The notes: generated from the sequence alone by a model not told the origin. Counted from the first letter of the stretch, positions 2,079-52,328 are shown. The stretch is 64,000 nucleotides of DNA from Octopus sinensis (GCF_006345805.1 NC_043000.1:43090001-43154000); one strand, 5' to 3'. Translations and numbers: made by a program.

Positions 2079-2309
2079 TTTTTACTCTTTTACTCTCTTA
2101 CTTGTTTCAGTCATTTGACTGCGGCCATGCTGGAGCACCGCCTTTAGTCGAGCAAATCGACCCCGGGACTTATTCTTTGTAAGCCCAGTACTTATTCTAT
2201 CGATCTGATTTGCCGAACCGCTAAGTAACGGGGACGTAAACACACCAGCATCGGTTGTCAAGCAATGCTAGGGGGACAAACACAGACTCACAAACATATA
2301 CACACACAG

Positions 2310-2343
<34 letters not shown>

Positions 2344-2492
2344 CATATATACGACAGGCTTCTTTCAGTTTCCGTCTACCAAATCCACTCACAAGGCATT
2401 GGTCGGCCCGGGGCTATAGCAGAAGACACTTGCCCAAGGTGCCACGCAGTGGGACTGAACCCGGAACCATGTGGTTGGTTAGCAAGCTACTT
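2079..2492 (-). mobile_element. SINE family 'A' body and tail (CORE-type tRNA-derived SINE, octopus OR-like), split from its head by Tx1-like element A
   Basis: Reverse complement reads AAGTAGCTTGCTAACCAACCACATGGTTCCGGGTTCAGTCCC...GGCACCTTGGGCAAGTG (CORE-like), then an internal (TA)n(TG)n, then tail CCAGCATGGCCGCAGTCAAATGACTGAAACAAGT. Colinear with the intact copy at 36452-36865. Confidence 0.9.
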
Positions 2493-2806
2493 TATTTCAA
2501 AACATTTGCCATAAAGGCAGTACACAGATTAAGTTAGCTTTGCGGGCTGGACGAGGACATTAATGAAGTGAATGATAATGAAAGAAAGATGATAAGGATG
2601 GGAGAAGACAAAAAGCGCCCGCCGACTTTCGCTTCTCTAAAACATTGTTCTTTTTAAAGATAAACACAAAACGAGGTATTAAACCTCTTACAATTTTTCC
2701 AATTTTTGGACTTAGCAGTCCATTATTACAAAACGAGGTATTAAACCTCTTACAATTTTTCAATTTTGGACTTAGCAGTCCATTACTAATAATAACAGTT
2801 CAATAA

Positions 2807-3235
2807 TTACATATCGTCCTCGAAATAGCTTGTGCCCGCGCCCTCCACCATCAACCACGCCTCCCTCAGAACGTAATCAAGTTCCGAGTTTGCGTCGCCC
2901 GGGACCAAGTTATAATCTTCATTGAGCTCCTTTAGCCCAAGCGTCACGTCGAACGCCACGGCCTCCACAGCTACCTGCGGAGGCCATTCGGGGTTCTGTG
3001 TGAAGGCTAAAGGTGCTCCCTTGTGGTGCTCTTCCATCACCTTTTCAATTTCGCCTCCTCTATAGAAGAGGACCAATACGTTCAGTTCTTTCGTTGGCGG
3101 CACAGTTCCCGCCAACGGTATTCCTTCTCTTGTCGGTGGCACAACCCCAACCGACGTAGTTCCGGGACATTCCGCTGCTATGTCACTGACAGCCGGCAAT
3201 GTCCCGTTTTTCTTCCTCTTTTTCTTTTTTTCCCT
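2807..3235 (-). pseudogene. Probable frameshifted C-terminal part of element A ORF1
   Basis: Open frame (track 2807..3322) overlapping the ORF1 end at an A-rich tract near 3210-3235; it stops 8 codons before the conserved TAATG motif. Confidence 0.55.
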
Positions 3236-4046
3236 TTTCAACTGAGGGAGGGTGCGTCTCCTCCGTGGCCGGAAGATTCGCCTTCCTCTCCTCATCCCTA
3301 TTATCCTTTGGTGAGCACCCATTGTTGCTCACCTTCCTCTTTCGGCCTCTGTTTGAGGAGTCCTCTGCTTTCTCGGCCGTTATCATTCCCTCTTCTAGAG
3401 GGGTTTTACTTAACTGTTCCGGGATCCTATTTTGTTCCCGGGGACAGTTCTTCTTTATGTGGCCGGACTCCAAGCACCGATGACACTTAGGGGGGCGACC
3501 CTCAAGCATCACCGGGTACCTGCACCCGGCCATTTTAAAAAAATCTGGAAGAACCAGATTGGCTGATTGGGTCCACAGGGTCAAAATTGCTTTTGACCCA
3601 ACCCAAGCAGCCACAGGAAGAACTTTTACGTTAAGGAGCTTAGTTTCGCTGCCACCCAGACCCCGGCGGATAGTCTCCTCTATCCACTCGGGTTCTATGT
3701 CGGGTGGCAGCCCGCAGATCCAAGCTTTCATCAATTTCTTTTTTTTGTACGTGGGCAGGAATAAGATTTCCTTACCCTCCAGGGGTTTGCTAGCAAATTT
3801 GCAAGCCTCTTCAGGGGTGTCAAATAGCAACCACACCGTTGCATATTTGACACCCCTGGAAATGAATTTAATTGTTGGCAAATACTCTTCCAACTCCTTT
3901 TCAATTGCCGTCTTTTCGAATAGGGCGATGGTGTCGAGTGCCTTGGAGTAGGTTCTCAACACCACCGTCCTATCTTCACGGTCTTTTAACCACTTTTTAG
4001 GTGGTATGATTTCCCACTCCAAAATTTTGTTATTTTTCATTGCCAT
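3183..4046 (-). CDS. ORF1p (gag-like nucleic-acid chaperone, CX2CX4HX4C zinc knuckle) of element A
   Basis: Contains EGRPPKCHRCLESGHIKKNCP. First ATG is at 4046 (MAMKNNK; the track starts at TTG 4085). N-terminal half aligns with element B ORF1 (EDRTVVLRTY..FEKTAIEKEL vs EKRTVVFKTF..FEKSTIEKCL). Confidence 0.85.
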   Translation of the reverse strand: MAMKNNKILEWEIIPPKKWLKDREDRTVVLRTYSKALDTIALFEKTAIEKELEEYLPTIKFISRGVKYATVWLLFDTPEEACKFASKPLEGKEILFLPTYKKKKLMKAWICGLPPDIEPEWIEETIRRGLGGSETKLLNVKVLPVAAWVGSKAILTLWTQSANLVLPDFFKMAGCRYPVMLEGRPPKCHRCLESGHIKKNCPREQNRIPEQLSKTPLEEGMITAEKAEDSSNRGRKRKVSNNGCSPKDNRDEERKANLPATEETHPPSVEKGKKEKEEEKRDIAGCQ

Positions 4047-4743
4047 GTTTTTTTTTAATATATTCAAATTAAACTCAAAAAGCAAGAAGAAAAAAGTTCA
4101 AAAGTCCAAATGAAATTTGATAGATTTTTGAAAAAACAAAAAGGAGAAAGCACAACAGAAGGGAAGAAATCAACGGAAAGTCGCAATAAAGAAAAAAACA
4201 AAAGGGGGGGTTAAATGAAGTTCAAAAGAAATTTAATAAACAGAAAAACACAGCAAAAATATTCTGGCCTTGCGGTACTCCCGGCCTGGGTTGAACCTGG
4301 AACGCCGCAACTGCAACACAACCTCCACAAAAATGGGTCCGAAAGGTAATCCAATAGTGGCTTATTTTTATAATTTTCTTGCGAAGTACTCTGACAAGGG
4401 AATAAATTCAACAAACCCAAACACAGCACTGGCTACCGCCAACGGTAATTTTAACAGTAACTGTATTGAATTCCGAGGATACGCCCCTCCACTGTTTTTT
4501 CTTTTTTTTTTTCAATGAACACAAAAACGGCAGCCGCCGAGAGCAGGCGAAATTGTCTCAGAGTTGGACACAACTTACTGAAATAATAATTGGCACGCAA
4601 TAAATTATGCCCAACTCACAATAAACAAAATCACTTACCTCGACAACTTGCCGTTTTTGGTCTTTTTTCTTTAATTGGACGGAGCTGGTTGACTCGCGTC
4701 CACTCTGGCTGAACAGGAAGCAACTGACTAACTGCGCATGTGC

Positions 4744-4780
4744 GTTAGCAAGCTACTTACCACACAGCCACTCCTGTGCC
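4744..4780 (-). mobile_element. SINE-A 5' head upstream of element A (A box TGGCTGTGTGG)
   Basis: Reverse complement is GGCACAGGAGTGGCTGTGTGGTAAGTAGCTTGCTAAC. Confidence 0.9.
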
Positions 4781-8093: not shown

Positions 8094-8929
8094 AGCGTAG
8101 ATTCGATTAGATTTTCCATTTGATATATGATCAATAACATAAGGAAGATATCTTCACGTAAAATTGAATTAGTAGCAAACAAATAAAATAAGAACATTAG
8201 AAGTCAAATTATCATGTTCGAAATGAAATTAAAGAACATTTACTATTGTCGTATTGTAATGTTACACGCCGAATATAAATTTATATGCGTTTAAACATTA
8301 TTGTTTATTTATGAATAACTTTGCGTAAGAAAATTATTATTTCTGTCGACAAAATTTATTGCTTGCAATAACACGATGAAGTATCGAAAGTTCATTAAAA
8401 TTTGGTCTTCAGATCAAACTTCCTCCTTAATATCAATACTGTCTTCACAGTGAAGTACTAAAACGCTCGCGAGAAGAGAAATATATATGCATTCCTTGAA
8501 GGTAGAATCTAATATATATAGCGTTCATCGAAATTAATTGAATATGAGGAAATGTAGTTAAATGTCAAATGAGGTGAGGTTGATGTACTATAGAATTATT
8601 TAAAACTTTTTTTGTCGTTCGTACTATTGTATACCAGTCAGCACCGAACGAGAAAAGCCTATGACGAAAGGCATTCGAATCGCAGTCATCTTTTCTTTAA
8701 TTATTTTCCCAGACGTAATGCATCTGAGATTGCATTATCCAAGGTGATATTTCCTGTAAATGATGCTATTTATATCCAAAAATAATTTAGGATTTCATTC
8801 TTCAGTATATCTTTTTGACTATTTTAAGGTTGCGGGGTGTAATACGAAATAATTGAACTGCTATTTCTTCTAAGTACTGCGACTACGAAGCGGCTTCTAC
8901 ATTGACTTATCAAAAATAACCTTTTTTTC

Positions 8930-9042
8930 AGTTTCCGTCCACCAAATCCATTCACAACGCTTTGGTCGCCAGTGGACGAGGGAATATAATAGAATACACT
9001 TGCACAAGGTGCCATGCAGGAGTACTGAACCCGGAACCATGT
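8930..9042 (-). mobile_element. SINE-A fragment
   Basis: CAGTTTCCGTCCACCAAATCC...CAAGGTGCCATGCAG..CTGAACCCGGAACCATGTG. Confidence 0.7.
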
Positions 9043-10634
9043 GCTACCATCGAAATATATAGCTGTAAATTATGATGCCTTTTGTTTTGCTTATTTAAGT
9101 AGACTGAAATGAAATCGTGGAAAAAATCACAGAAAAAAAAAGATATAATGACTATAAAAAAAGTGGGTATGAGAATACATTTTCTTCATTTTCTCGCTAA
9201 CTATAATTACTATTGCAAATTAATTATCTTTCAATTAGCGTAGATTAAATTCTATTATTTTCTCGAAAGGTCCTCAAAATATCTTAATCATCTACCTACA
9301 ATAGAAATACATACTCGTAGTCACATTATTGGGTACATTAATTTAAAAAAGAAAATTATTTCGCTATCGCTTTATATATATCTTCTCAATTTGTTTACGG
9401 GTGACAATTATCAGAACGCCTGCTTAATGAATCTTAGAAAGATGAAAATATACAGTGCTTCGACTTTTTACTTTTTTTTTTCCAGGGTCAACATATTAAA
9501 TACCAGTTATTTACCTGGGTGTTTTAATAAAATATATATTGGAAAAGATATGAAAAATTCTATTTTGAAGAGATTGTTATTTTTCCTTCTGCGTCGTTAA
9601 TATTTTTTGTATTTAAAACAGCAAGAGAAGAAATTGTTCTGTTTTTCTTTTATGATTTAAATTTTAGAATTTTCCTTTACCTATGTAATTTACTATACCC
9701 TGGTAATTATTACTCAAGAATAGGACACTTAGAGCACCTTTATAATAGTTGACTAACAATTACTTATACAATGACAATTAATTTCATCCTATGTATTCCC
9801 TGAAACATTGTTTTGAAAGTTTGTTTTGCGATGTCCACGATGTAACATATGGTTACTTACCAGAACTAATGGACTATTTTAAAAACTATTCCATTTATAA
9901 GCCTATAACTTTATTATGAGTAAATGTTATTGCATTTCCCTCTTCTCAACTGAGTGTCATTTTAGACAATTGCATTAATTTAGCAGTTTTCATTATGTTA
10001 CTCTACTTCCATAAGCGTTAAACCAACTTGAAGGGAATTATCATGCCGTTACATTATCTACAAGCTTCGTAAGTCTCTTTTGCAGAGTACGTCGTTTACT
10101 TGTTACGTTCTACATCTATGCACTTTTTATTATATAGAATTGACATTGCGCGTCGATAAAGCAAAACGAAATATATCATCCCGTATGTTGAATCAGAAAA
10201 TTACTCTAATACTGAACGTGATGATCCGACGTGGTTTAGCAGAAACATCGTTCGAGCCAGTACCTACGGGATTAAGCAAGCCTGATCAATAATGACGTAA
10301 TGTGAACCAGTAACGAAATAATACAGCAGAAAGTCTCCGGTTGTGATTCAATACTCAGGTGATTTTCTTACAGTTGCACTGTTTTTATTACAAAACGGAA
10401 ATTTGTAGAAGCGAAGTTTAGTGTATTCAGAAAAGTTTTAGTGGTTCTAAAACTGTCAGCAAGACATTTCTTCACCATTTGAATACTGTCTACATCGACT
10501 CACGAATATACCCTGTAGGCAAATCCAGATGGATAATCTTCGTGGAATGAGGCGCTTTGAATTTACTTAAAGGATAGAAGTTGCTTCAATAGATACTTTT
10601 TGCGTCAATGTTCATCCTAACCTGCTTGGATTTT

Positions 10635-11990
10635 GTTAAATATAATCATTTTACGTATATTGCACAACCAATGTACAACGATTGTCCCATAACTGTAGAA
10701 ACACTACTTCTGTAGTGAAGTTTCTTTTCGATTATAAGAAGGTAGGCCATATGACATCGTTCATTGGATCCAAAGTATTTTGTACTACTCACCAAAAACA
10801 ATAGTCAGATAGGCAGTACTGATCATTTGAAAGTTACTTCAAACGGTGCATTTCGTTGGGAAAAAATGTCACCAGTGTCATTTCCCCGATTAAAGCAGTT
10901 CTGAAGATTAGTCAAAAGAAATGAACTAATTTTACGATATTTTTTAGACTATTCCGTTTATACATTATTTTCGCCGGTATGAAAGAAAAGGTGGAGTGAA
11001 TCTTCTAACTTCTTTTCAGAATGCTTTTTCATGCGGCCTTGTTAAGCAAGTCGCTATCACATAATTTTCATTGAAGCTTAAAACTAATTTACGAGAATCA
11101 ATCATAAAGTAATGCAATTTTTATTTGAATGATTTTTTGATTGATACTATCCTGTTTGCGAGGATTAATCAAATAGCAATGCAATTAAAAAATGCATTAC
11201 TTTCTAACCCACCTTCGTACATACTAGCTTTACCATCCCATAGAAATAGGAATAGGAATAGAGTAGTAAGTTATTTATCGGCTAACTTCGCGGTCACATG
11301 GGAATAGAATAGCAATTTCTGGGTTGATATAGTGAATGACTCATTCAAAACAAAGATCAACTGATGAAAATTTCTCCCTGAGCTGAAGTTAAAAAATGAG
11401 GTTGACGCGCAAACAATTTTCAGTGACTTTCAGAGAAGCAGGGAAGATAATTTATCATTTCTCTGGAAGTTATTTCAATTACATTTCAAATTTTGCGTAA
11501 TTCATCTCTTAACTCTTCTAAGTTCATGTCATTTAGCTTCTTGACAGTTATATACTTTAGTTATATACTATCGATAACATGTTGCATTCAATATTCGTCC
11601 CTACACAGATTTTAATACATAGAATTGGCATTATATATCGATAATAAACTCTAGGTACTATACCAAAGTAGCCTTTGCGTTTTCCTTTGGGTGTGGGTAG
11701 AAAAGATGCAGGGATGGACAAAATAATTGATAGATTAGGTAAGGAGAATATAAGAACAAAAAGTTATGCAGGCATTGCTCAGAGACAAATAAAAAGTTAA
11801 ATATAACCATTTTACTTATATTGCACAATGTACGACGATTGTCCCAAAAACAATAGAAACACTACTTCTGTAGTGAAGTGCCTTTTCGATTATAAGAAGA
11901 TAGGCCATATGATCGCTTACGGATCCAAAGTAGTTTGTAATACTCACCAAAAGTCAGATAGTCAGTACTGATCATTTGAAAGTTGCCTCC
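10635..11990. repeat. Pair of diverged ~200-bp direct repeats (10635-10840 and 11796-11990)
   Basis: Shared blocks TAGAAACACTACTTCTGTAGTGAAGT, TTTCGATTATAAGAAG, GGATCCAAAGTA, CAGTACTGATCATTTGAAAGTT; offset 1161 bp. Confidence 0.85.
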
Positions 11991-31496: not shown

Positions 31497-31905
31497 AGCG
31501 TAGGAGTGGCTGTGTTGTATGTTGCTTGCTTACGAACCACATGGTTCCGGGTTCAGTGCGCGTGGCACCTTGGGCAAGTGCCTTTTACTCTAGCCTCGGG
31601 TCGACTAAAGCCTTGATTGTATTTGGTAGACGGAAACTGAAAGAAGCCTATCGTATATATGTATATATACGTATATATGTATGTGTGCGTATATGTTTGT
31701 GTGTCTGCATTTATCCGCCCAATATCGCTTGACAGCCGATGCTGGTGTGTTTACGTCCCTGTAACCAAGCTGTTCGGCAAAAGTGATCGATAGAATAAGT
31801 ACTAGGCTTTCAAAGAATAAGTCCTGGGATCCATTTGCTCGACTAAAGGCGGTGCTCCAGCATGGCCACAGTCAGATGACTGAAACAAGTAAAAGAGTAA
31901 AAGAG
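31497..31905 (+). mobile_element. SINE-A, full length, empty target site
   Basis: Head, CORE-like segment, internal TA/TG tract and tail CCAGCATGGCCACAGTCAGATGACTGAAACAAGTAAAAG. Confidence 0.85.
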
Positions 31906-36451: not shown

Positions 36452-36865
36452 TACTCTTACTCTTTTACTCTTTTACTTGTTTCAGTCATTTGACTGCGGC
36501 CATGCTGGAGCACCGCCTTTACTCGAGCAACTCGACCCCGGGACTTATTCTTTGTAAGCCCAGTACTTATTCTATCGGTCTGTTTTGCCGAACCGCTAAG
36601 TGACGGGGACATAAACACACCAGCATCGGTTGTCAAGCAATGCCAGGGGGACAGACGCACAGACACACACAGATACACATACATACATATATATACATAT
36701 ATACGACGGGCTTCTTTCAGTTTCCGTCTACCAAATCCACTCACAAGGCTTTGGTCGGCCCGAGGCTATAGTAGAAGACACTTGCCCAAGGTGCCACGGA
36801 GTGGGACTGAACCCGGAACCATGTGGTTTGTAAACAAGCTACTTACCACACAGCCACTCCTGCGT
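36452..36865 (-). mobile_element. SINE-A, intact, empty target site (variant AAGTAGCTTGTTTAC)
   Basis: Uninterrupted head, body, microsatellite and tail; serves as the reference for the split copies. Confidence 0.92.
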
Positions 36866-38484: not shown

Positions 38485-38719
38485 ATAGGTGCAGGAGTGG
38501 CTGTGTGGCAACTAGCTTGCTTAGTAACCACATGGTTCTGGTTCAGTCTCACTCCGTGGCACCTTGGGCAACTGTCGTCTGCTATAGCAAGCCTTGTGAG
38601 TGGATCTGGTTGACGGAAACTGAAACAAGCCTGTCGTATATATATATATGTACGTATGTATGTATGTATGTGCATGTATATGTTTGTGTGTCTATGTTTG
38701 TCCTCCCAACATCACTAGA
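38485..38719 (+). mobile_element. SINE-A, empty target site, 3' part replaced by the TIR element
   Basis: AGGTGCAGGAGTGGCTGTGTGGCAACTAGCTTGCTTAGTAACCACATGG... Confidence 0.8.
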
Positions 38720-48278: not shown

Positions 48279-48314
48279 GCGCAGGAGTGGCTGTGTGGTA
48301 AGTAGCTTGCTAAC
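48279..48314 (+). mobile_element. SINE-A 5' head upstream of element B
   Basis: GCGCAGGAGTGGCTGTGTGGTAAGTAGCTTGCTAAC. Confidence 0.9.
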
Positions 48315-48795
48315 CTCACTGACAGAAGAGTGACTTTGCCTACCGTACTACGGTTTGGACGCGTTTTCTTCCCGGTAAGAGTTTTGCTGTGTTGTTAATT
48401 GTTGAATTCCTACTACTGAAAATTTGCCTTTAAACGTTGCTGATCTGTCTTGTTATCCGGTTTTACCGGGAAATAATTGAATAATTTCTTACCGTTGAAC
48501 TGTTAGCCACTGTGGCTTTTTATTTACGTGACTATACATAGTCCTGCCAGACTATTTTCGTGCCCCTCCCCCGAATGCGGGTAGGAATTGGAATTTTTGA
48601 ACTGCTTTTTTGAACTACTTTGGAAGAAAAACTTTCTATAGGTTTCCCAGTTTTGTGGGAAACCAATACTTGTAATTTTTGTGTTGTCTAATTTCAACAG
48701 AATAATATCTGTTGAAATTATTCACGAAAGTAGTGCTCTTGAGGAGAGCAATGTTAAAAAATTTTCTGAGGTAGCCGCAGTGGCTACCGAGAAAA

Positions 48796-49710
48796 TTGAC
48801 ATCGATGTCAACCAGCTCGTCGAGCTATTTAAAAAAAATGCAAGAGGAGGGTGGTGATGTTAAAATATCACCCTCCGCCAGTATCGTGGAGACCGAGAAG
48901 CGGACCGTAGTGTTTAAAACTTTCTGTCCACAAAGCAGAAGGTTCAAACACTTTGAAAAAAGTACCATCGAGAAATGCCTGTCCCCGATTTGGAAGGACA
49001 TCGTGTACGTCGCCAGGGGACGGGCATATGGCACTGTGGATGTCCGCTTCTCGGGGGAAGAAATGGCCCGCGGGCATTCTGTAAACCCCCTAAAAACCAA
49101 GGAGGTGGTACTTTTTCCAAGCTATAGGGGACGCAGGTCGTCCCGGGTCAGGATTGTAGAAGCCCCGCCGGAAGTAGATCCGGTAGAGGTAGTGGCTGCC
49201 CTATTATATAAAAGGGCGGACAAAATAAAAATACTAGAAGTAACATGCTCTACCCCTCGATTTTGGCTCGGGCGTAACATTAATATATTAATTCAAGGAA
49301 CAGCGGAGGACCTACAGCTCCTTCCTGAGAGGGTGCTCGTGGGCGAGAACGTAGCCCTCAGGGTACAGGTCGAAGGCCGAAAACCCACCTGTTACGCCTG
49401 CGGCAAAAAGGGCTACATTCGTGTAGACTATCCAGACAAGCAAAAGAAACCGCAGACACCAGGCCCCTCAGATAATAAAAAAGTCCCTACCCTTGCAAAC
49501 ACACCTACTCCTACAAAAAAATCCCACTCCTGCTGTTACGGTGCCACCCCAAAACAGACTGAAGAAAAAAACCCAGCCCTCGCACTCACAAACCCCTACA
49601 CTATTAAAACCTCCCACCCACCTAAAAACTGCGGCGCCTACCGAACAAACTATTGCTACCCCAGACGATACCATGGAGGTATCAGAGGGGGGATTTACAC
49701 CAGTTCGTAA
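48796..49710 (+). CDS. ORF1p of element B (degenerate zinc knuckle, frameshifted ends)
   Basis: VEGRKPTCYACGKKGYIRVDYP is CX2CX4HX4C with H>Y and C>Y; homologous to element A ORF1. C-terminal part continues in other frames to about 50102. Confidence 0.8.
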   Translation: MTSMSTSSSSYLKKMQEEGGDVKISPSASIVETEKRTVVFKTFCPQSRRFKHFEKSTIEKCLSPIWKDIVYVARGRAYGTVDVRFSGEEMARGHSVNPLKTKEVVLFPSYRGRRSSRVRIVEAPPEVDPVEVVAALLYKRADKIKILEVTCSTPRFWLGRNINILIQGTAEDLQLLPERVLVGENVALRVQVEGRKPTCYACGKKGYIRVDYPDKQKKPQTPGPSDNKKVPTLANTPTPTKKSHSCCYGATPKQTEEKNPALALTNPYTIKTSHPPKNCGAYRTNYCYPRRYHGGIRGGIYTSS

Positions 49711-50119
49711 AAGAATTCGTGCAGCATCCCCGTCCACATCCCCTACAAAAAATAATAAAAACAAAGACACACCACAGACACGGAAAAAAAATCCCGTTCA
49801 ACTGGCCCAGAAAAAGAAGACAAGAAAGAAAATGAACTCATATTAATTGAATTCGACACACAAGACAAATACATAAACGATATTGTGGTTCAGCATCAGT
49901 CAGCAAGACTGTACAACAAATACAAAATCGAAATAGACACGCGTGGATTGCGGAAACAACGTTCAAACAATTAAAAGACAGACACCCAAACGCCATCCGG
50001 CATGTCGCGAAATTGCCGGACTATCTGAAGAAAGAGGAGAAAGAAGGGGCCCACAAACGTGTGGTGAGGTCGGCCCCCACCTCTCCAACGAAATGTAAGT
50101 AGAACTTTTACTTTTTGTA

Positions 50120-51943
50120 ATGGCTTCGCTTAACCTTGGTTGTTTAAATGTGCGTGGTCTGAGTTCGAAGTGGAAGCAGGCTTGTTTCCTCGACGACCTC
50201 AGATCACATGATATACATGTGATGGTTGCTACAGAGACCAAGCTGGACAGCCTACAAACCTTCTCGCCTCTCCTGAATGGCTACGAGAAAATCATGTCTC
50301 CTGGCCAGACCGGAGGGCGAGGGGGCGTAGTGGTACTGATCCGTAAAGACTTGGCTCTACAGACAAGTACAGTCTATGTAGACCCAGAAGGTGGGCTGGT
50401 CGTCCTTGATATGACATACAGCAGTAAGGCCTTCAGGTTGATCGGACTCTATGCACCTTGTGCTAGAGGTTTCCAAACTGATTTTTATCGGCGCCTAGAG
50501 GGCTTTCTCGTGACGTCGAAGACTTTAGTGATATTAGGGGACTTTAATGCTATCGTTGACGTACACATCGATAGCGTTGGCTCGATCTATAGGAAAGTGA
50601 ACTCACGTCTCGTGGATCTGCTTAAGCGGTTTCAGCTAGCAGATCGTTTCAGACTTGACCATCCGAACGTCCCAGAGTGGACCTGGATGAGTGGCGACGG
50701 AAGATTCAAGTCTTATCTAGACAGGATAGTGATAAGAACTAGAGATAAGTCTAGTTTTAGTTGTCCACAGCTCGTCCAGGTGCCCTATACTGACCATAGA
50801 ATGGTCACGTGTAGACTGGACATAGATAGCACACTTAAGATAGGAACCGGCTACTGGAAGCTGAACAAGTCTATTTTGACACGCGAGGCATACGGTAGCC
50901 GGATTAAGGTGTTAGTGCAGAGGGCGTTAACCGGAGCCGTGGTTAATAACCGGTGGTGCTTCACCCTCAAAAGAGCCATTCGATTCGAGTCCATTAGATT
51001 TAGTAAACAACTAAGACTAGATAGGGCTAGAATAGAAGGGCAACTAGTTAAGAACTTAGAGGAGGCGTTGAGGTTGGGCTCTGCATCTCACATTTTAGCG
51101 GCGAGAACGGCATTAGACCGTCACCTCAAAACCAAACATGAGGGATGTAGAGTCCGGGCTAAAGTACGAGCATTGGGCCGTGAGGGAATTAATGTTGCCG
51201 GATGGGCCCGTACGATAGAAACACAGCGTGGAAACGATGCCACAATTGGGTCTCTTGTTGATGAAAACGGATGCACGATCAAGAAGCGGGACGAGATGTG
51301 TGAGGCACTTCACAAGCACTTCGCCGAGTTGTTCGGGAGGTGCGGGACGCTGGATCATGGTGAGGCCCTTAGGGACTTCCTGTCTGGTGGCCCGCGCCTC
51401 TCGACACGAGAGACTGAGTGCTGTGAAGGGCCAATCACAGCCGAGGAAGTAATCGAGGTAATGGGCAAGTGCCCCGGGGAGAAGTCGCTGGGTCTCGATG
51501 GTCTGCCCTATGAATTTTATAGAAGTATGCCAGACTTGTTCGGGCACCTGCTGGCTAGCGTCTACGCCAACTGGCAGCAGAATGGGAGAATTCCCAAGTC
51601 TGCGAGCCGGGGGGCGGTGACGTTGATCAGGAAGGACCCGAACAAGGGGGACGAGATAGGGAACTTCAGGCCCATAACTCTGTTAAACACAGAGTTAAAG
51701 ATTCTGGCCAAGGTGCTAGCAAAAAGGTCGGCGCGGGTCGTAGACAAACTTGTCGGGGAAGCGCAATCGTGCGCTATCCCCGGCAGAACGATCCACGACA
51801 ATCTCCACCTTATACGCTACTCCTTAGAGAGGGTGGGGAAGCTTTCTGGCGCAGGGGGAGCACTGGTACATTTAGACCAGTCCAAGCATTTGATAGGGTC
51901 GACCATCGGTACCTGGCGGTGGTCCTCGGAGAGGCTGGCCTAG
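50120..51943 (+). CDS. ORF2p of element B: APE-like endonuclease and N-terminal reverse transcriptase (pseudogenised)
   Basis: EN motifs LNVRGL, TETK, YAP, GDFN, YLDRI, TDH; RT motifs GLDGLPYEFY, FRPITLLN..KILAK, LDQSK/AFDRVDH (1-bp frameshift near 51889). Truncated before the catalytic YADD-type motif. Confidence 0.93.
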   Translation: MASLNLGCLNVRGLSSKWKQACFLDDLRSHDIHVMVATETKLDSLQTFSPLLNGYEKIMSPGQTGGRGGVVVLIRKDLALQTSTVYVDPEGGLVVLDMTYSSKAFRLIGLYAPCARGFQTDFYRRLEGFLVTSKTLVILGDFNAIVDVHIDSVGSIYRKVNSRLVDLLKRFQLADRFRLDHPNVPEWTWMSGDGRFKSYLDRIVIRTRDKSSFSCPQLVQVPYTDHRMVTCRLDIDSTLKIGTGYWKLNKSILTREAYGSRIKVLVQRALTGAVVNNRWCFTLKRAIRFESIRFSKQLRLDRARIEGQLVKNLEEALRLGSASHILAARTALDRHLKTKHEGCRVRAKVRALGREGINVAGWARTIETQRGNDATIGSLVDENGCTIKKRDEMCEALHKHFAELFGRCGTLDHGEALRDFLSGGPRLSTRETECCEGPITAEEVIEVMGKCPGEKSLGLDGLPYEFYRSMPDLFGHLLASVYANWQQNGRIPKSASRGAVTLIRKDPNKGDEIGNFRPITLLNTELKILAKVLAKRSARVVDKLVGEAQSCAIPGRTIHDNLHLIRYSLERVGKLSGAGGALVHLDQSKHLIGSTIGTWRWSSERLA

Positions 51944-52002
51944 GCCCGACCTTTCGAGGTTGGATCGCTGCTTTGTATAGCGACATCGAGTCTGTAGTCA
52001 AA

Positions 52003-52086
52003 GTCTTCTGCTATAGCTACGGGCCGACCAATGCCTTGTGAGTGGATTTGGTAGACGGAAACTGAAAGAAGCCTGTCGTATATATG

Positions 52087-52146
<60 letters not shown>

Positions 52147-52328
52147 TATGTGTGTGTGTGTGTGGTGTCTGTATGTTTGTGTTTGTCCCCCTAGCATTGC
52201 TTGACAACCGATGCTGGCGTGTTTACGTCCCCGTCACTTAGCGGTTCGGCAAAAGAGACCGATGGAATAAGTACAGGACTTACAAAGAATAAGTTCCGGG
52301 GTCGATTTGCTCGACTAAAGACGGTGCA
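52003..52328 (+). mobile_element. SINE-A body downstream of element B
   Basis: GTCTTCTGCTATAGC..GGCCGACCAATGCCTTGTGAGTGGATTTGG, internal TA/TG tract, partial tail. Confidence 0.9.

What the first reader, a model, noticed from the sequence alone, without database searches (positions are those of the whole stretch)
2478..4780. Element A splits a SINE head with a perfect 15-bp TSD, defining the cleavage geometry
Seen: GTTAGCAAGCTACTT at 2478-2492 and 4744-4758. Removing 2493-4758 restores an intact SINE-A colinear with 36452-36865. The implied first-strand nick is 5'-GCTACTT/ACCAC-3', a pyrimidine/purine step like the L1 EN consensus TTTT/AA, with the second cut 15 nt away. The duplicated segment corresponds to the D-arm/anticodon arm of a tRNA-Gly-like head (my alignment). 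Inference: specificity may have come from, or may extend to, real tRNA genes. There is no poly(A) tail; AAATA plus the TSD AA forms AATAAA at the junction.
Basis: partly seen in the sequence, partly recalled or inferred. Interest (0 to 1): 0.82.

Follow-up and report, generated by a model that had tools for sequence, protein, structure and literature searches.

The report
Site-specific LINE insertions in octopus SINE
A 2.25-kb retrotransposon lacking its own reverse transcriptase sits in an octopus SINE with a perfect 15-bp duplication, and three other related elements are joined to the same SINE nucleotide, so this is a target-specific LINE lineage of a known general kind rather than a chance hit.

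Summary
GTTAGCAAGCTACTT occurs at 2478-2492 and 4744-4758. Removing 2493-4758 rebuilds a SINE colinear with 36452-36865 (385/429 identities). The window is octopus DNA; the closest database proteins are from Octopus sinensis.

Element A (2493-4743, sense on the minus strand) has a 5' UTR, an ORF1-type protein with a CCHC knuckle, a conserved extra C-terminal region and a 3' UTR ending GAAATA. It has no poly(A) and no endonuclease or reverse transcriptase.

There a second SINE head is followed, at the same nucleotide, by a different LINE, Element B. B has an ORF1 27% identical to A's and an ORF2 with AP-endonuclease and RT domains whose best solved-structure match is human L1 ORF2p. Two A-like copies in O. 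sinensis are joined to SINE heads at the same nucleotide. That gives four independent 5' junctions at one SINE position.

Best reading: an L1/Tx1-type LINE lineage that targets the SINE head between its box A-like and box B-like motifs. A belongs to an ORF2-less, HAL1-like branch.

Not supported: the tRNA-Gly identity. The exact nick is uncertain by up to 3 nt. Relatives end in AAATAAA, so the AATAAA is probably element-borne.

The parts
2082..2477 (-). Body and tail of the interrupted SINE, downstream of the insertion in SINE sense. It includes the box B-like motif GGTTCAGTCCC and the internal TA/TG microsatellite.
   Evidence: blastn against SINE 36452-36865: 89% identity over 411 columns.
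2478..2492 (.). Target-site duplication, the copy at the element's 3' end (AAGTAGCTTGCTAAC in element sense).
   Evidence: Exact 15-mer.
2493..4743 (-). Element A: a 2251-bp ORF2-less LINE derivative, full length, with no poly(A).
   Evidence: Bounded by the duplication. No EN/RT remnant by tblastn with seven ORF2 relatives. Single copy in the window.
2493..2806 (-). Element A 3' UTR. It ends ...UGCCUUUAUGGCA (small hairpin) AAUGUUUUGAAAUA and contains a 61-63-bp tandem duplication at 2666-2788.
2807..3322 (-). ORFc: a conserved C-terminal coding region of about 130 aa, in a different frame from ORF1 in this copy. No known domain.
   Evidence: 58% identity to the same region of the O. sinensis copy in L005. 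No Pfam hit. No homologue in Element B or in ORF2 relatives.
3183..4046 (-). ORF1-type protein of 287 aa from the ATG, with a CCHC zinc knuckle (CHRCLESGHIKKNC).
   Evidence: Pfam zf-CCHC E 0.005, below the curated cut-off. Profile hits to CCHC knuckles in PDB, E 6.6e-6. 27% identity and E 2e-21 to Element B ORF1. 64% identity to O. sinensis LOC115225585.
4047..4743 (-). Element A 5' UTR. It begins GCACATGCGCAG, a motif shared with the 5' ends of the two O. sinensis copies.
4744..4758 (.). Target-site duplication, the copy at the element's 5' end.
4759..4780 (-). First ~22 nt of the SINE head, including the box A-like motif TGGCTGTGTGG.
36452..36865 (-). Intact SINE copy used as reference for the unoccupied site.
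48279..48314 (+). Head of a second SINE copy, ending in the same 15-mer AAGTAGCTTGCTAAC.
48315..52002 (+). Element B: a different LINE joined to the SINE at the same nucleotide. ORF1 is 48796-49710. ORF2 (AP-endonuclease plus the N-terminal part of RT) is 50120-51943 and continues after a frameshift to 52002. Its 3' half is deleted.
   Evidence: Pfam Exo_endo_phos E 2.2e-12; RVT_1 E 7.6e-5, 22.9 bits, below its 29.6-bit cut-off. Best PDB match is human L1 ORF2p, E 6.6e-35. Relatives align only to about residue 628 of about 1145.
52003..52327 (+). Remainder of the second SINE (reference positions 328 to 59). About 50 nt of SINE, the second duplication copy and Element B's 3' end are missing, which fits one later deletion.

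Best explanation
Element A is a complete target-primed retrotransposition product of an L1/Tx1-type LINE lineage that recognises one site in the head of the abundant octopus tRNA-class SINE. The partner's AP-type endonuclease nicks the strand complementary to the SINE RNA at or within 3 nt of 5'-GCTACTT^ACCAC-3'. That position is just 3' of the box A-like motif. The freed 3'-OH, ending ...CTT, primes reverse transcription on the element RNA, whose 3' end (...GAAAUA(AA)) can pair with it over 2-3 nt. The other strand is cut about 15 nt away, after GCTAAC, which produces the 15-bp duplication.

Element A has no endonuclease or RT. It belongs to an ORF2-less branch, analogous to mammalian HAL1, that is inferred to be moved in trans by an autonomous relative such as Element B. 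That would also explain why it lands at the same nucleotide.

Shown: the anatomy, the duplication, the rebuilt SINE, the homology of the A and B ORF1 proteins, the EN+RT content of B, and four junctions at one nucleotide.

Inferred: the exact nick, mobilisation in trans, and membership of the Tx1 clade.
For: - Exact 15-bp duplication, and the SINE is rebuilt when the insert is removed.
- Element B, a separate lineage (ORF1 27% identical, E 2e-21), starts immediately after the same 15-mer in another SINE copy. That SINE's body resumes downstream of B.
- The O. sinensis copies L001 (...GTAAGTAGCTTGCTTCC|TGTGCATGCG) and L005 (...GTAAGAAGTTTGCTTCC|ACTGCGCATG) have the same junction, with different outer flanks.
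- SINEs make up about 11.6% of an octopus genome (PMC13282606) and are about 400 bp long. A random hit on one given SINE nucleotide is therefore about 3e-4 per insertion.
- B ORF2 has Exo_endo_phos and, below cut-off, RVT_1. It matches human L1 ORF2p across EN and RT at E 6.6e-35, against 0.017 for R2.
- All three A-type copies share the ORF1+ORFc layout without ORF2. The ORF2-less form has therefore propagated.
- A relative, L004, has a 14-18-bp duplication and a hairpin+AAATAAA terminus like A's.
- Tx1-clade LINEs are known to be target-specific, including for other transposons (PMC4494074, PMC4640811). L1-Tx1 families are annotated as recently active in Octopus vulgaris (PMC13282606).
Against: - Only one complete 3' junction (A's) could be examined. 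B and L001 are truncated at the 3' side.
- The L005 copy is not followed by SINE sequence and shows no duplication.
- The two more distant relatives, L003 and L004, have unrelated flanks. Specificity is therefore not general to the wider ORF2 family.
- No intact B-type 3' end was available to compare with A's tail.
- Tx1 placement rests on elimination and on literature annotation, not on a phylogeny with reference sequences.
Confidence: 0.78

Rival explanations
1. The SINE head is carried by the element rather than supplied by each target. Either transcripts start in the upstream SINE, so the first ~37 nt travel with the RNA. Or one ancestral SINE+insert composite amplified as a unit. In both cases identical 5' junctions would be shared by descent, and the 15-mer would be part of the element's own end.
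For: - All four 5' junctions are identical.
- The L005 copy has the head but no SINE body downstream.
- Tx1 families that carry target-derived U1/U2 sequence at their 5' ends are documented (PMC4494074; noted in PMC4758252).
Against: - A and B are separate lineages with unrelated 5' UTRs. At least two independent events at one nucleotide are needed in any case.
- A is followed by the SINE from the duplication to its tail. B is followed by a SINE body.
- The head variant follows the source, not the element lineage. It is GCTAAC for both A and B in the window, and GCTTCC for both O. sinensis copies.
- No duplication flanks head+element in L005.
- Even if heads are carried, joining them seamlessly still requires a SINE target.
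Confidence: 0.12
2. This is a chance insertion of a LINE with no sequence preference into a very abundant SINE. The 15-bp duplication then says nothing about specificity.
For: - SINEs cover about 11.6% of octopus genomes (PMC13282606).
- L1-type endonucleases give 7-20-bp duplications anywhere (established knowledge of L1).
- The relatives L003 and L004 sit in unrelated sequence.
Against: - Four junctions fall at the same nucleotide, in two related element families (A-type, three copies; B-type, one) and from two sources, the window and O. sinensis.
- Two of the six SINE heads in this window are occupied at that nucleotide.
Confidence: 0.04
3. Element A is a retrocopy or a domesticated host gene derived from a LINE ORF1, as L1TD1 is in mammals. 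It would not be a mobile family.
For: O. sinensis annotates a homologue as a protein-coding gene, LOC115225585.
Against: - There are three copies at unrelated loci, each with the same UTR-ORF layout and each joined to a SINE head.
- The copies are degenerate, with frameshifts and stop codons.
- There is no poly(A) tail such as a processed mRNA copy would carry.
Confidence: 0.03

Closest known systems
Target-specific Tx1-clade LINEs: Tx1L in the Xenopus piggyBac element Tx1D, Keno in U2 snRNA genes, Tx1-Mar in crocodilian Mariner-N4_AMi (PMC4494074)
   Same: - AP-type endonuclease plus RT in ORF2.
- L1-group affinity.
- ORF1 with a CCHC knuckle.
- Nucleotide-precise insertion into a multicopy sequence, including other transposons.
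- Non-autonomous partners that share the target.
   Different: - The target here is the head of a tRNA-class SINE, between its box A-like and box B-like motifs.
- I found no report of this target in the papers searched.
- Clade membership was not tested by phylogeny.
HAL1 (half-L1) of mammals (PMC5753468, citing Bao & Jurka 2010)
   Same: - A LINE derivative that keeps only ORF1.
- It has propagated as a family and is presumed to use the ORF2 protein of an autonomous relative.
   Different: - The ORF1 is the knuckle-containing type, not the coiled-coil Transposase_22 type.
- It carries an extra conserved ~130-aa region of unknown fold.
- It is site-specific.
- It has no poly(A).
Human L1 endonuclease target site TTTT/AA, with 7-20-bp duplications
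   Same: - Staggered cuts about 15 nt apart.
- A pyrimidine-rich 3'-OH side (CTACTT).
- Short microhomology between the primer and the RNA 3' end.
   Different: - The 3' side of the nick (ACCAC) is not a purine run.
- There is no poly(A) to pair with a T-run.
- The site recurs exactly, which L1 does not do.
tRNA-gene-specific LINEs of the NeSL/LIN group (NeSL-1_TV, LIN15_SM, LIN25_SM; PMC4640811)
   Same: They insert inside tRNA or tRNA-derived sequence.
   Different: Those elements use a restriction-like endonuclease. Element B has an AP-type endonuclease. The target here is a SINE, not a demonstrated tRNA gene.

Membership tests
L1 group / Tx1 clade of non-LTR retrotransposons | ORF2 with an N-terminal AP-type endonuclease followed by a reverse transcriptase | tested here: met
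   Element B: Exo_endo_phos E 2.2e-12, above cut-off. RVT_1 E 7.6e-5, 22.9 bits, below the 29.6-bit cut-off because the RT is truncated. Element A has no ORF2.
L1 group / Tx1 clade of non-LTR retrotransposons | Closer to L1-group ORF2 than to other solved LINE proteins | tested here: met
   Human L1 ORF2p E 6.6e-35 across EN and RT; L1 EN alone about 1e-10; R2 0.017. R1Bm and TRAS1 endonucleases are not among the 15 matches at E<=1.
L1 group / Tx1 clade of non-LTR retrotransposons | RT-domain phylogeny places the element inside Tx1 (RTclass1 / Repbase references) | not testable with these tools
   No labelled Tx1 reference sequence could be obtained. Thirty cluster look-ups gave no clade names. 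Indirect support: L1-Tx1 is the only L1-group label in the O. vulgaris repeat annotation (PMC13282606).
L1 group / Tx1 clade of non-LTR retrotransposons | Type I ORF1 (RRM plus CCHC knuckle) | tested here: inconclusive
   The knuckle is present. An RRM is suggested only by the beta-alpha-beta pattern of a low-confidence model, pLDDT 38.8. No Pfam RRM hit.
Target-specific LINE | Independent copies joined to the same nucleotide of the same target sequence | tested here: met
   Four 5' junctions (A, B, L001, L005), two of them with a SINE body on the far side. Only one 3' junction could be read.
HAL1-like ORF1-only LINE derivative | Encodes an ORF1 homologue but no ORF2, in several copies of the same structure | tested here: met
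   A and L005 show the full layout. L001 shows it up to a truncation.
HAL1-like ORF1-only LINE derivative | Mobilised in trans by the ORF2 protein of an autonomous relative | not testable with these tools
   Inferred from the shared insertion site with Element B. No intact B-type 3' end was available for comparison.
tRNA-derived SINE (SINE2) with a tRNA-Gly head | Head recognisable as a tRNA of defined anticodon | tested here: not met
   No Rfam tRNA match at E<=10. ARAGORN finds none at default settings or down to an 80% threshold, and gives conflicting Ser/Trp/undetermined calls at 70%. Only box A-like TGGCTGTGTGG and box B-like GGTTCAGTCCC are visible in the sequence.
L1 endonuclease consensus site | Nick at TTTT/AA | tested here: not met
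   The inferred nick is CTACTT/ACCAC. It shares only a pyrimidine-rich 5' side.

The most novel reading that the evidence does not exclude
A group of AP-endonuclease LINEs in octopods has evolved nucleotide-precise integration between the box A-like and box B-like motifs of the genome's most abundant SINE. The LINE would then act as a parasite that disables copies of another retroelement. An ORF1-only branch with a new conserved C-terminal domain rides on the same machinery. The same recognition might extend to genuine tRNA genes.
Probability: 0.35. Interest if true: 0.6.

Novelty: new member of a known kind. Interest (0 to 1): 0.45.

Why it matters
Target-specific LINEs are rare. They are studied both as models of how an AP-type endonuclease acquires sequence specificity and as leads for site-directed gene insertion (the R2-based PRINT approach, PMC11371274).

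An L1/Tx1-type element that lands on one nucleotide of a SINE present in very many copies would add a new target class. It also supplies a natural autonomous/non-autonomous pair. It would show one retroelement family systematically splitting the promoter region of another, in a genome whose SINE expansion is a defining feature.

It is an extension of a known theme, not a new mechanism.

Tried and rejected
- **More copies by protein search.** All three word-indexed searches (A ORF1, B ORF2, an ORF1 profile) returned only six proteins.
- **Exact look-ups of window ORFs.** Nothing is on record.
- **Metagenome scans.** Two scans for the 3' and 5' junction patterns found nothing.
- **Clade naming.** I tried to read the clade from source names of 30 ORF2 relatives. 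None gave a clade name.
- **Structure prediction.** The model of ORF1+ORFc had pLDDT 38.8, too poor for a fold search.
- **ORFc as the C-terminus of a deleted ORF2.** Rejected: no similarity to full-length relatives or to Element B.
- **tRNA identity of the SINE head.** Rfam and ARAGORN give nothing consistent.
- **SINE fragment at 8923-9044 as another occupied site.** Rejected: it reads as an ordinary truncated old copy.
- **Christensen et al. 2000 on the Tx1L endonuclease.** Not held in the library.

Full report
**Observation.** GTTAGCAAGCTACTT is present exactly at 2478-2492 and 4744-4758. With up to two mismatches the window holds four matches, against 0.10 expected, and all are in SINE heads. 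Joining the two flanks gives a sequence that aligns end to end with the SINE at 36452-36865. The score is 385/429 identities, and the gaps lie only in the internal microsatellite. The SINE lies antisense on the + strand. The insert is also sense on the minus strand. There is no poly(A). Read in element sense, the 3' junction is ...TGTTTTGAAATA|AAGTAGCTTGCTAAC|CAACCACATGG, and the 5' junction is ...GTGTGGT|AAGTAGCTTGCTAAC|GCACATGCGCAG. The repeat cannot be extended in either direction.

**What Element A is.** The 2251-bp insert has four parts:
- a ~700-nt 5' UTR;
- a 287-aa ORF with a CCHC zinc knuckle;
- a second ORF of 171 aa that overlaps the first in another frame;
- a 314-nt 3' UTR with a 61-63-bp tandem duplication.

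It contains no trace of an endonuclease or a reverse transcriptase. The nearest database protein is Octopus sinensis LOC115225585, at 64% identity, so the window is octopus DNA.

Two O. sinensis loci carry A-like copies. L001 is 74% identical at the nucleotide level and L005 is 78% identical. L005 has the same layout, including the second coding region at 58% amino-acid identity. This region, ORFc, is therefore a conserved part of the family. It has no Pfam match. It has no counterpart in Element B or in full-length ORF2 relatives.

In A, ORFc lies +1 relative to ORF1. In L001 and L005 it lies -1. In each case the shift falls at an A/G-rich run. These are most simply decayed copies of one long ORF. 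Three copies share the ORF2-less structure, so it is a propagating form analogous to mammalian HAL1 (PMC5753468).

**The key new finding.** The third exact 15-mer, at 48300-48314 on the minus strand, is the end of a second SINE head (48279-48314, sense on +). Directly after ...GCTAAC a different element begins. This Element B has:
- an ORF1 (48796-49710) that is 27% identical to A's, E 2e-21;
- an ORF2 (50120-51943, continuing after a frameshift to 52002) with an Exo_endo_phos domain and the start of an RT.

Relatives align only to about residue 628 of about 1145. At 52003 the SINE body resumes at reference position 328. A single later deletion therefore removed B's 3' half, the second duplication copy and about 50 nt of SINE.

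In O. sinensis both A-like copies are also preceded by a SINE head that ends at the same nucleotide:
- L001...GTGGTAAGTAGCTTGCTTCC|TGTGCATGCG;
- L005...GTGGTAAGAAGTTTGCTTCC|ACTGCGCATG.

Their outer flanks differ. That gives four independent 5' junctions, in two related element families (A-type and B-type) and from two sources, at one SINE position. SINEs occupy about 11.6% of an octopus genome (PMC13282606) and are about 400 bp long. A random insertion would hit a given SINE nucleotide with probability near 3e-4.

In this window two of six recognisable SINE heads are occupied. Unoccupied heads in the window and in L005 are intact across the site.

**Affinity.** B's ORF2 matches human L1 ORF2p across both the endonuclease and the RT at E 6.6e-35. 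L1 endonuclease alone scores about 1e-10 and R2 only 0.017. An exhaustive HMMER search finds 19,412 relatives. The best is from the octopod Argonauta hians (50% identity). Others come from a sea turtle and from the limpet Patella caerulea.

No source name identifies a clade, so I could not run the defining RT phylogeny. By elimination the best label is L1/Tx1:
- the endonuclease is AP-type;
- the affinity is to the L1 group;
- ORF1 has a CCHC knuckle, as described for Tx1-like elements of non-mammalian animals (PMC5203782);
- the O. vulgaris repeat annotation lists L1-Tx1 as its only L1-group LINE (PMC13282606).

Tx1 is one of the three LINE groups known for target specificity, and its targets include other transposons (PMC4494074, PMC4640811).

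**Mechanism.** For an element that is sense on the minus strand, the priming strand is the window + strand. Its 3' end at 2492 (...GCTACTT) is extended directly into the complement of the element's 3' end at 2493. The second cut lies after GCTAAC in SINE sense, 15 nt away. The four 5' junctions agree on that second position.

Two qualifications apply. First, two more distant relatives (L003 and L004, about 38% ORF2 identity) end in a short hairpin followed by AAATAAA. L004 has a 14-18-bp duplication that begins right after that motif. A ends ...GAAATA followed by the target's AAG. The AATAAA is therefore more likely the element's own terminus overlapping the target by 2-3 nt than a signal created by the junction. 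The nick is then uncertain by 0-3 nt, and the duplication is 12-15 bp. Second, the resemblance to the L1 site TTTT/AA is limited to a pyrimidine-rich 3'-OH side.

The insertion separates the box A-like motif (TGGCTGTGTGG) from the box B-like motif (GGTTCAGTCCC). This is read directly from the sequence. That it inactivates the SINE copy is inference.

**tRNA link.** Rfam gives no tRNA match to the SINE head at E<=10. ARAGORN finds nothing at default settings or down to an 80% threshold. At a 70% threshold it gives Ser, Trp or undetermined for different copies. No tRNA gene occurs in the window or in any fetched locus. The tRNA-Gly assignment is unsupported, and extension to real tRNA genes remains untested.

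**Rivals.** The main alternative is that the SINE head travels with the element, either as a target-derived 5' sequence of the kind known in Tx1 (PMC4494074) or as part of a composite SINE+insert unit. It is favoured by L005, whose 3' flank is not SINE.

Four points weigh against it:
- A and B have unrelated 5' UTRs and are separate lineages.
- Both are followed by a SINE body.
- The head variant follows the source rather than the element lineage.
- No duplication surrounds head+element in L005.

Chance insertion and a domesticated host gene are both poorly supported.

**Limits.** Only one intact 3' junction exists in the DNA I could reach. All attempts to obtain further copies failed.

**Verdict.** The case is a new example of a known kind, target-specific L1/Tx1-type LINEs with a non-autonomous partner. 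It is not a new mechanism.

Noticed in passing
window 3183-3322 (minus); L001:6800-6870; L005:17230-17290: ORF1 and the conserved downstream region ORFc overlap at an A/G-rich run. The frame offset is +1 in the window copy and -1 in both O. sinensis copies. This may be decay at a homopolymer, assembly error, or a programmed frameshift.
   Followed up: partly
window 4578-4638 (minus strand): A 61-nt stretch in Element A's 5' UTR starts GTAAGT and ends TTTCAG, like a short intron. That is unexpected in a retrotransposed copy. It may be coincidence.
   Followed up: no
window 4732-4743 (minus); L001:5488-5500; L005:15740-15755: All three A-type copies begin with a GC(A/G)CATG(C/T)GC-like near-palindrome, which from memory resembles an NRF1-type promoter motif. 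Element B's 5' end is unrelated.
   Followed up: no
window 2666-2788: A 61-63-bp tandem duplication (94% identity) in Element A's 3' UTR. It is absent from the O. sinensis copies, whose 3' UTRs are not alignable to A's.
   Followed up: partly
L003:11700-11751 and L004:11740-11791, compared with window 2491-2530 (minus): ORF2 relatives from an ENA assembly end in two small hairpins followed by AAATAAA. Element A has one similar hairpin (UGCCUUUAUGGCA) before GAAAUA(AA). This may be a conserved 3' recognition structure.
   Followed up: partly
L004:8038-8056 and 11792-11809: This relative is 5'-truncated. It has a 14-18-bp duplication (GGAAGCCTGTAGAGGACG) and sits inside a CCHC-knuckle coding sequence of another element.
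   Followed up: partly
protein cluster of P0016 (Patella caerulea, locus tags SNE40_003393 to 003415): Near-identical ORF2 homologues carry a run of alternate locus tags (SNE40_003393 to 003415) on one limpet contig. That pattern suggests insertions in a tandem array of a multicopy target. The DNA could not be fetched.
   Followed up: no
L005:10001-36638: The O. sinensis gene model 'K02A2.6-like' is a chimera. It joins a fragment of the A-like ORF1 to an integrase-type domain of an unrelated retroelement.
   Followed up: no
window 48279-48314 and 4744-4780, compared with 36830-36865, 31499-31540, 38491-38530: Both occupied SINE heads in the window read GCTAAC at the cut, and both O. sinensis ones read GCTTCC. 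Unoccupied heads read GTTTAC, GCTTAC, GCTTAG or GCTACC. The sample is too small to tell whether the endonuclease prefers particular SINE variants.
   Followed up: partly
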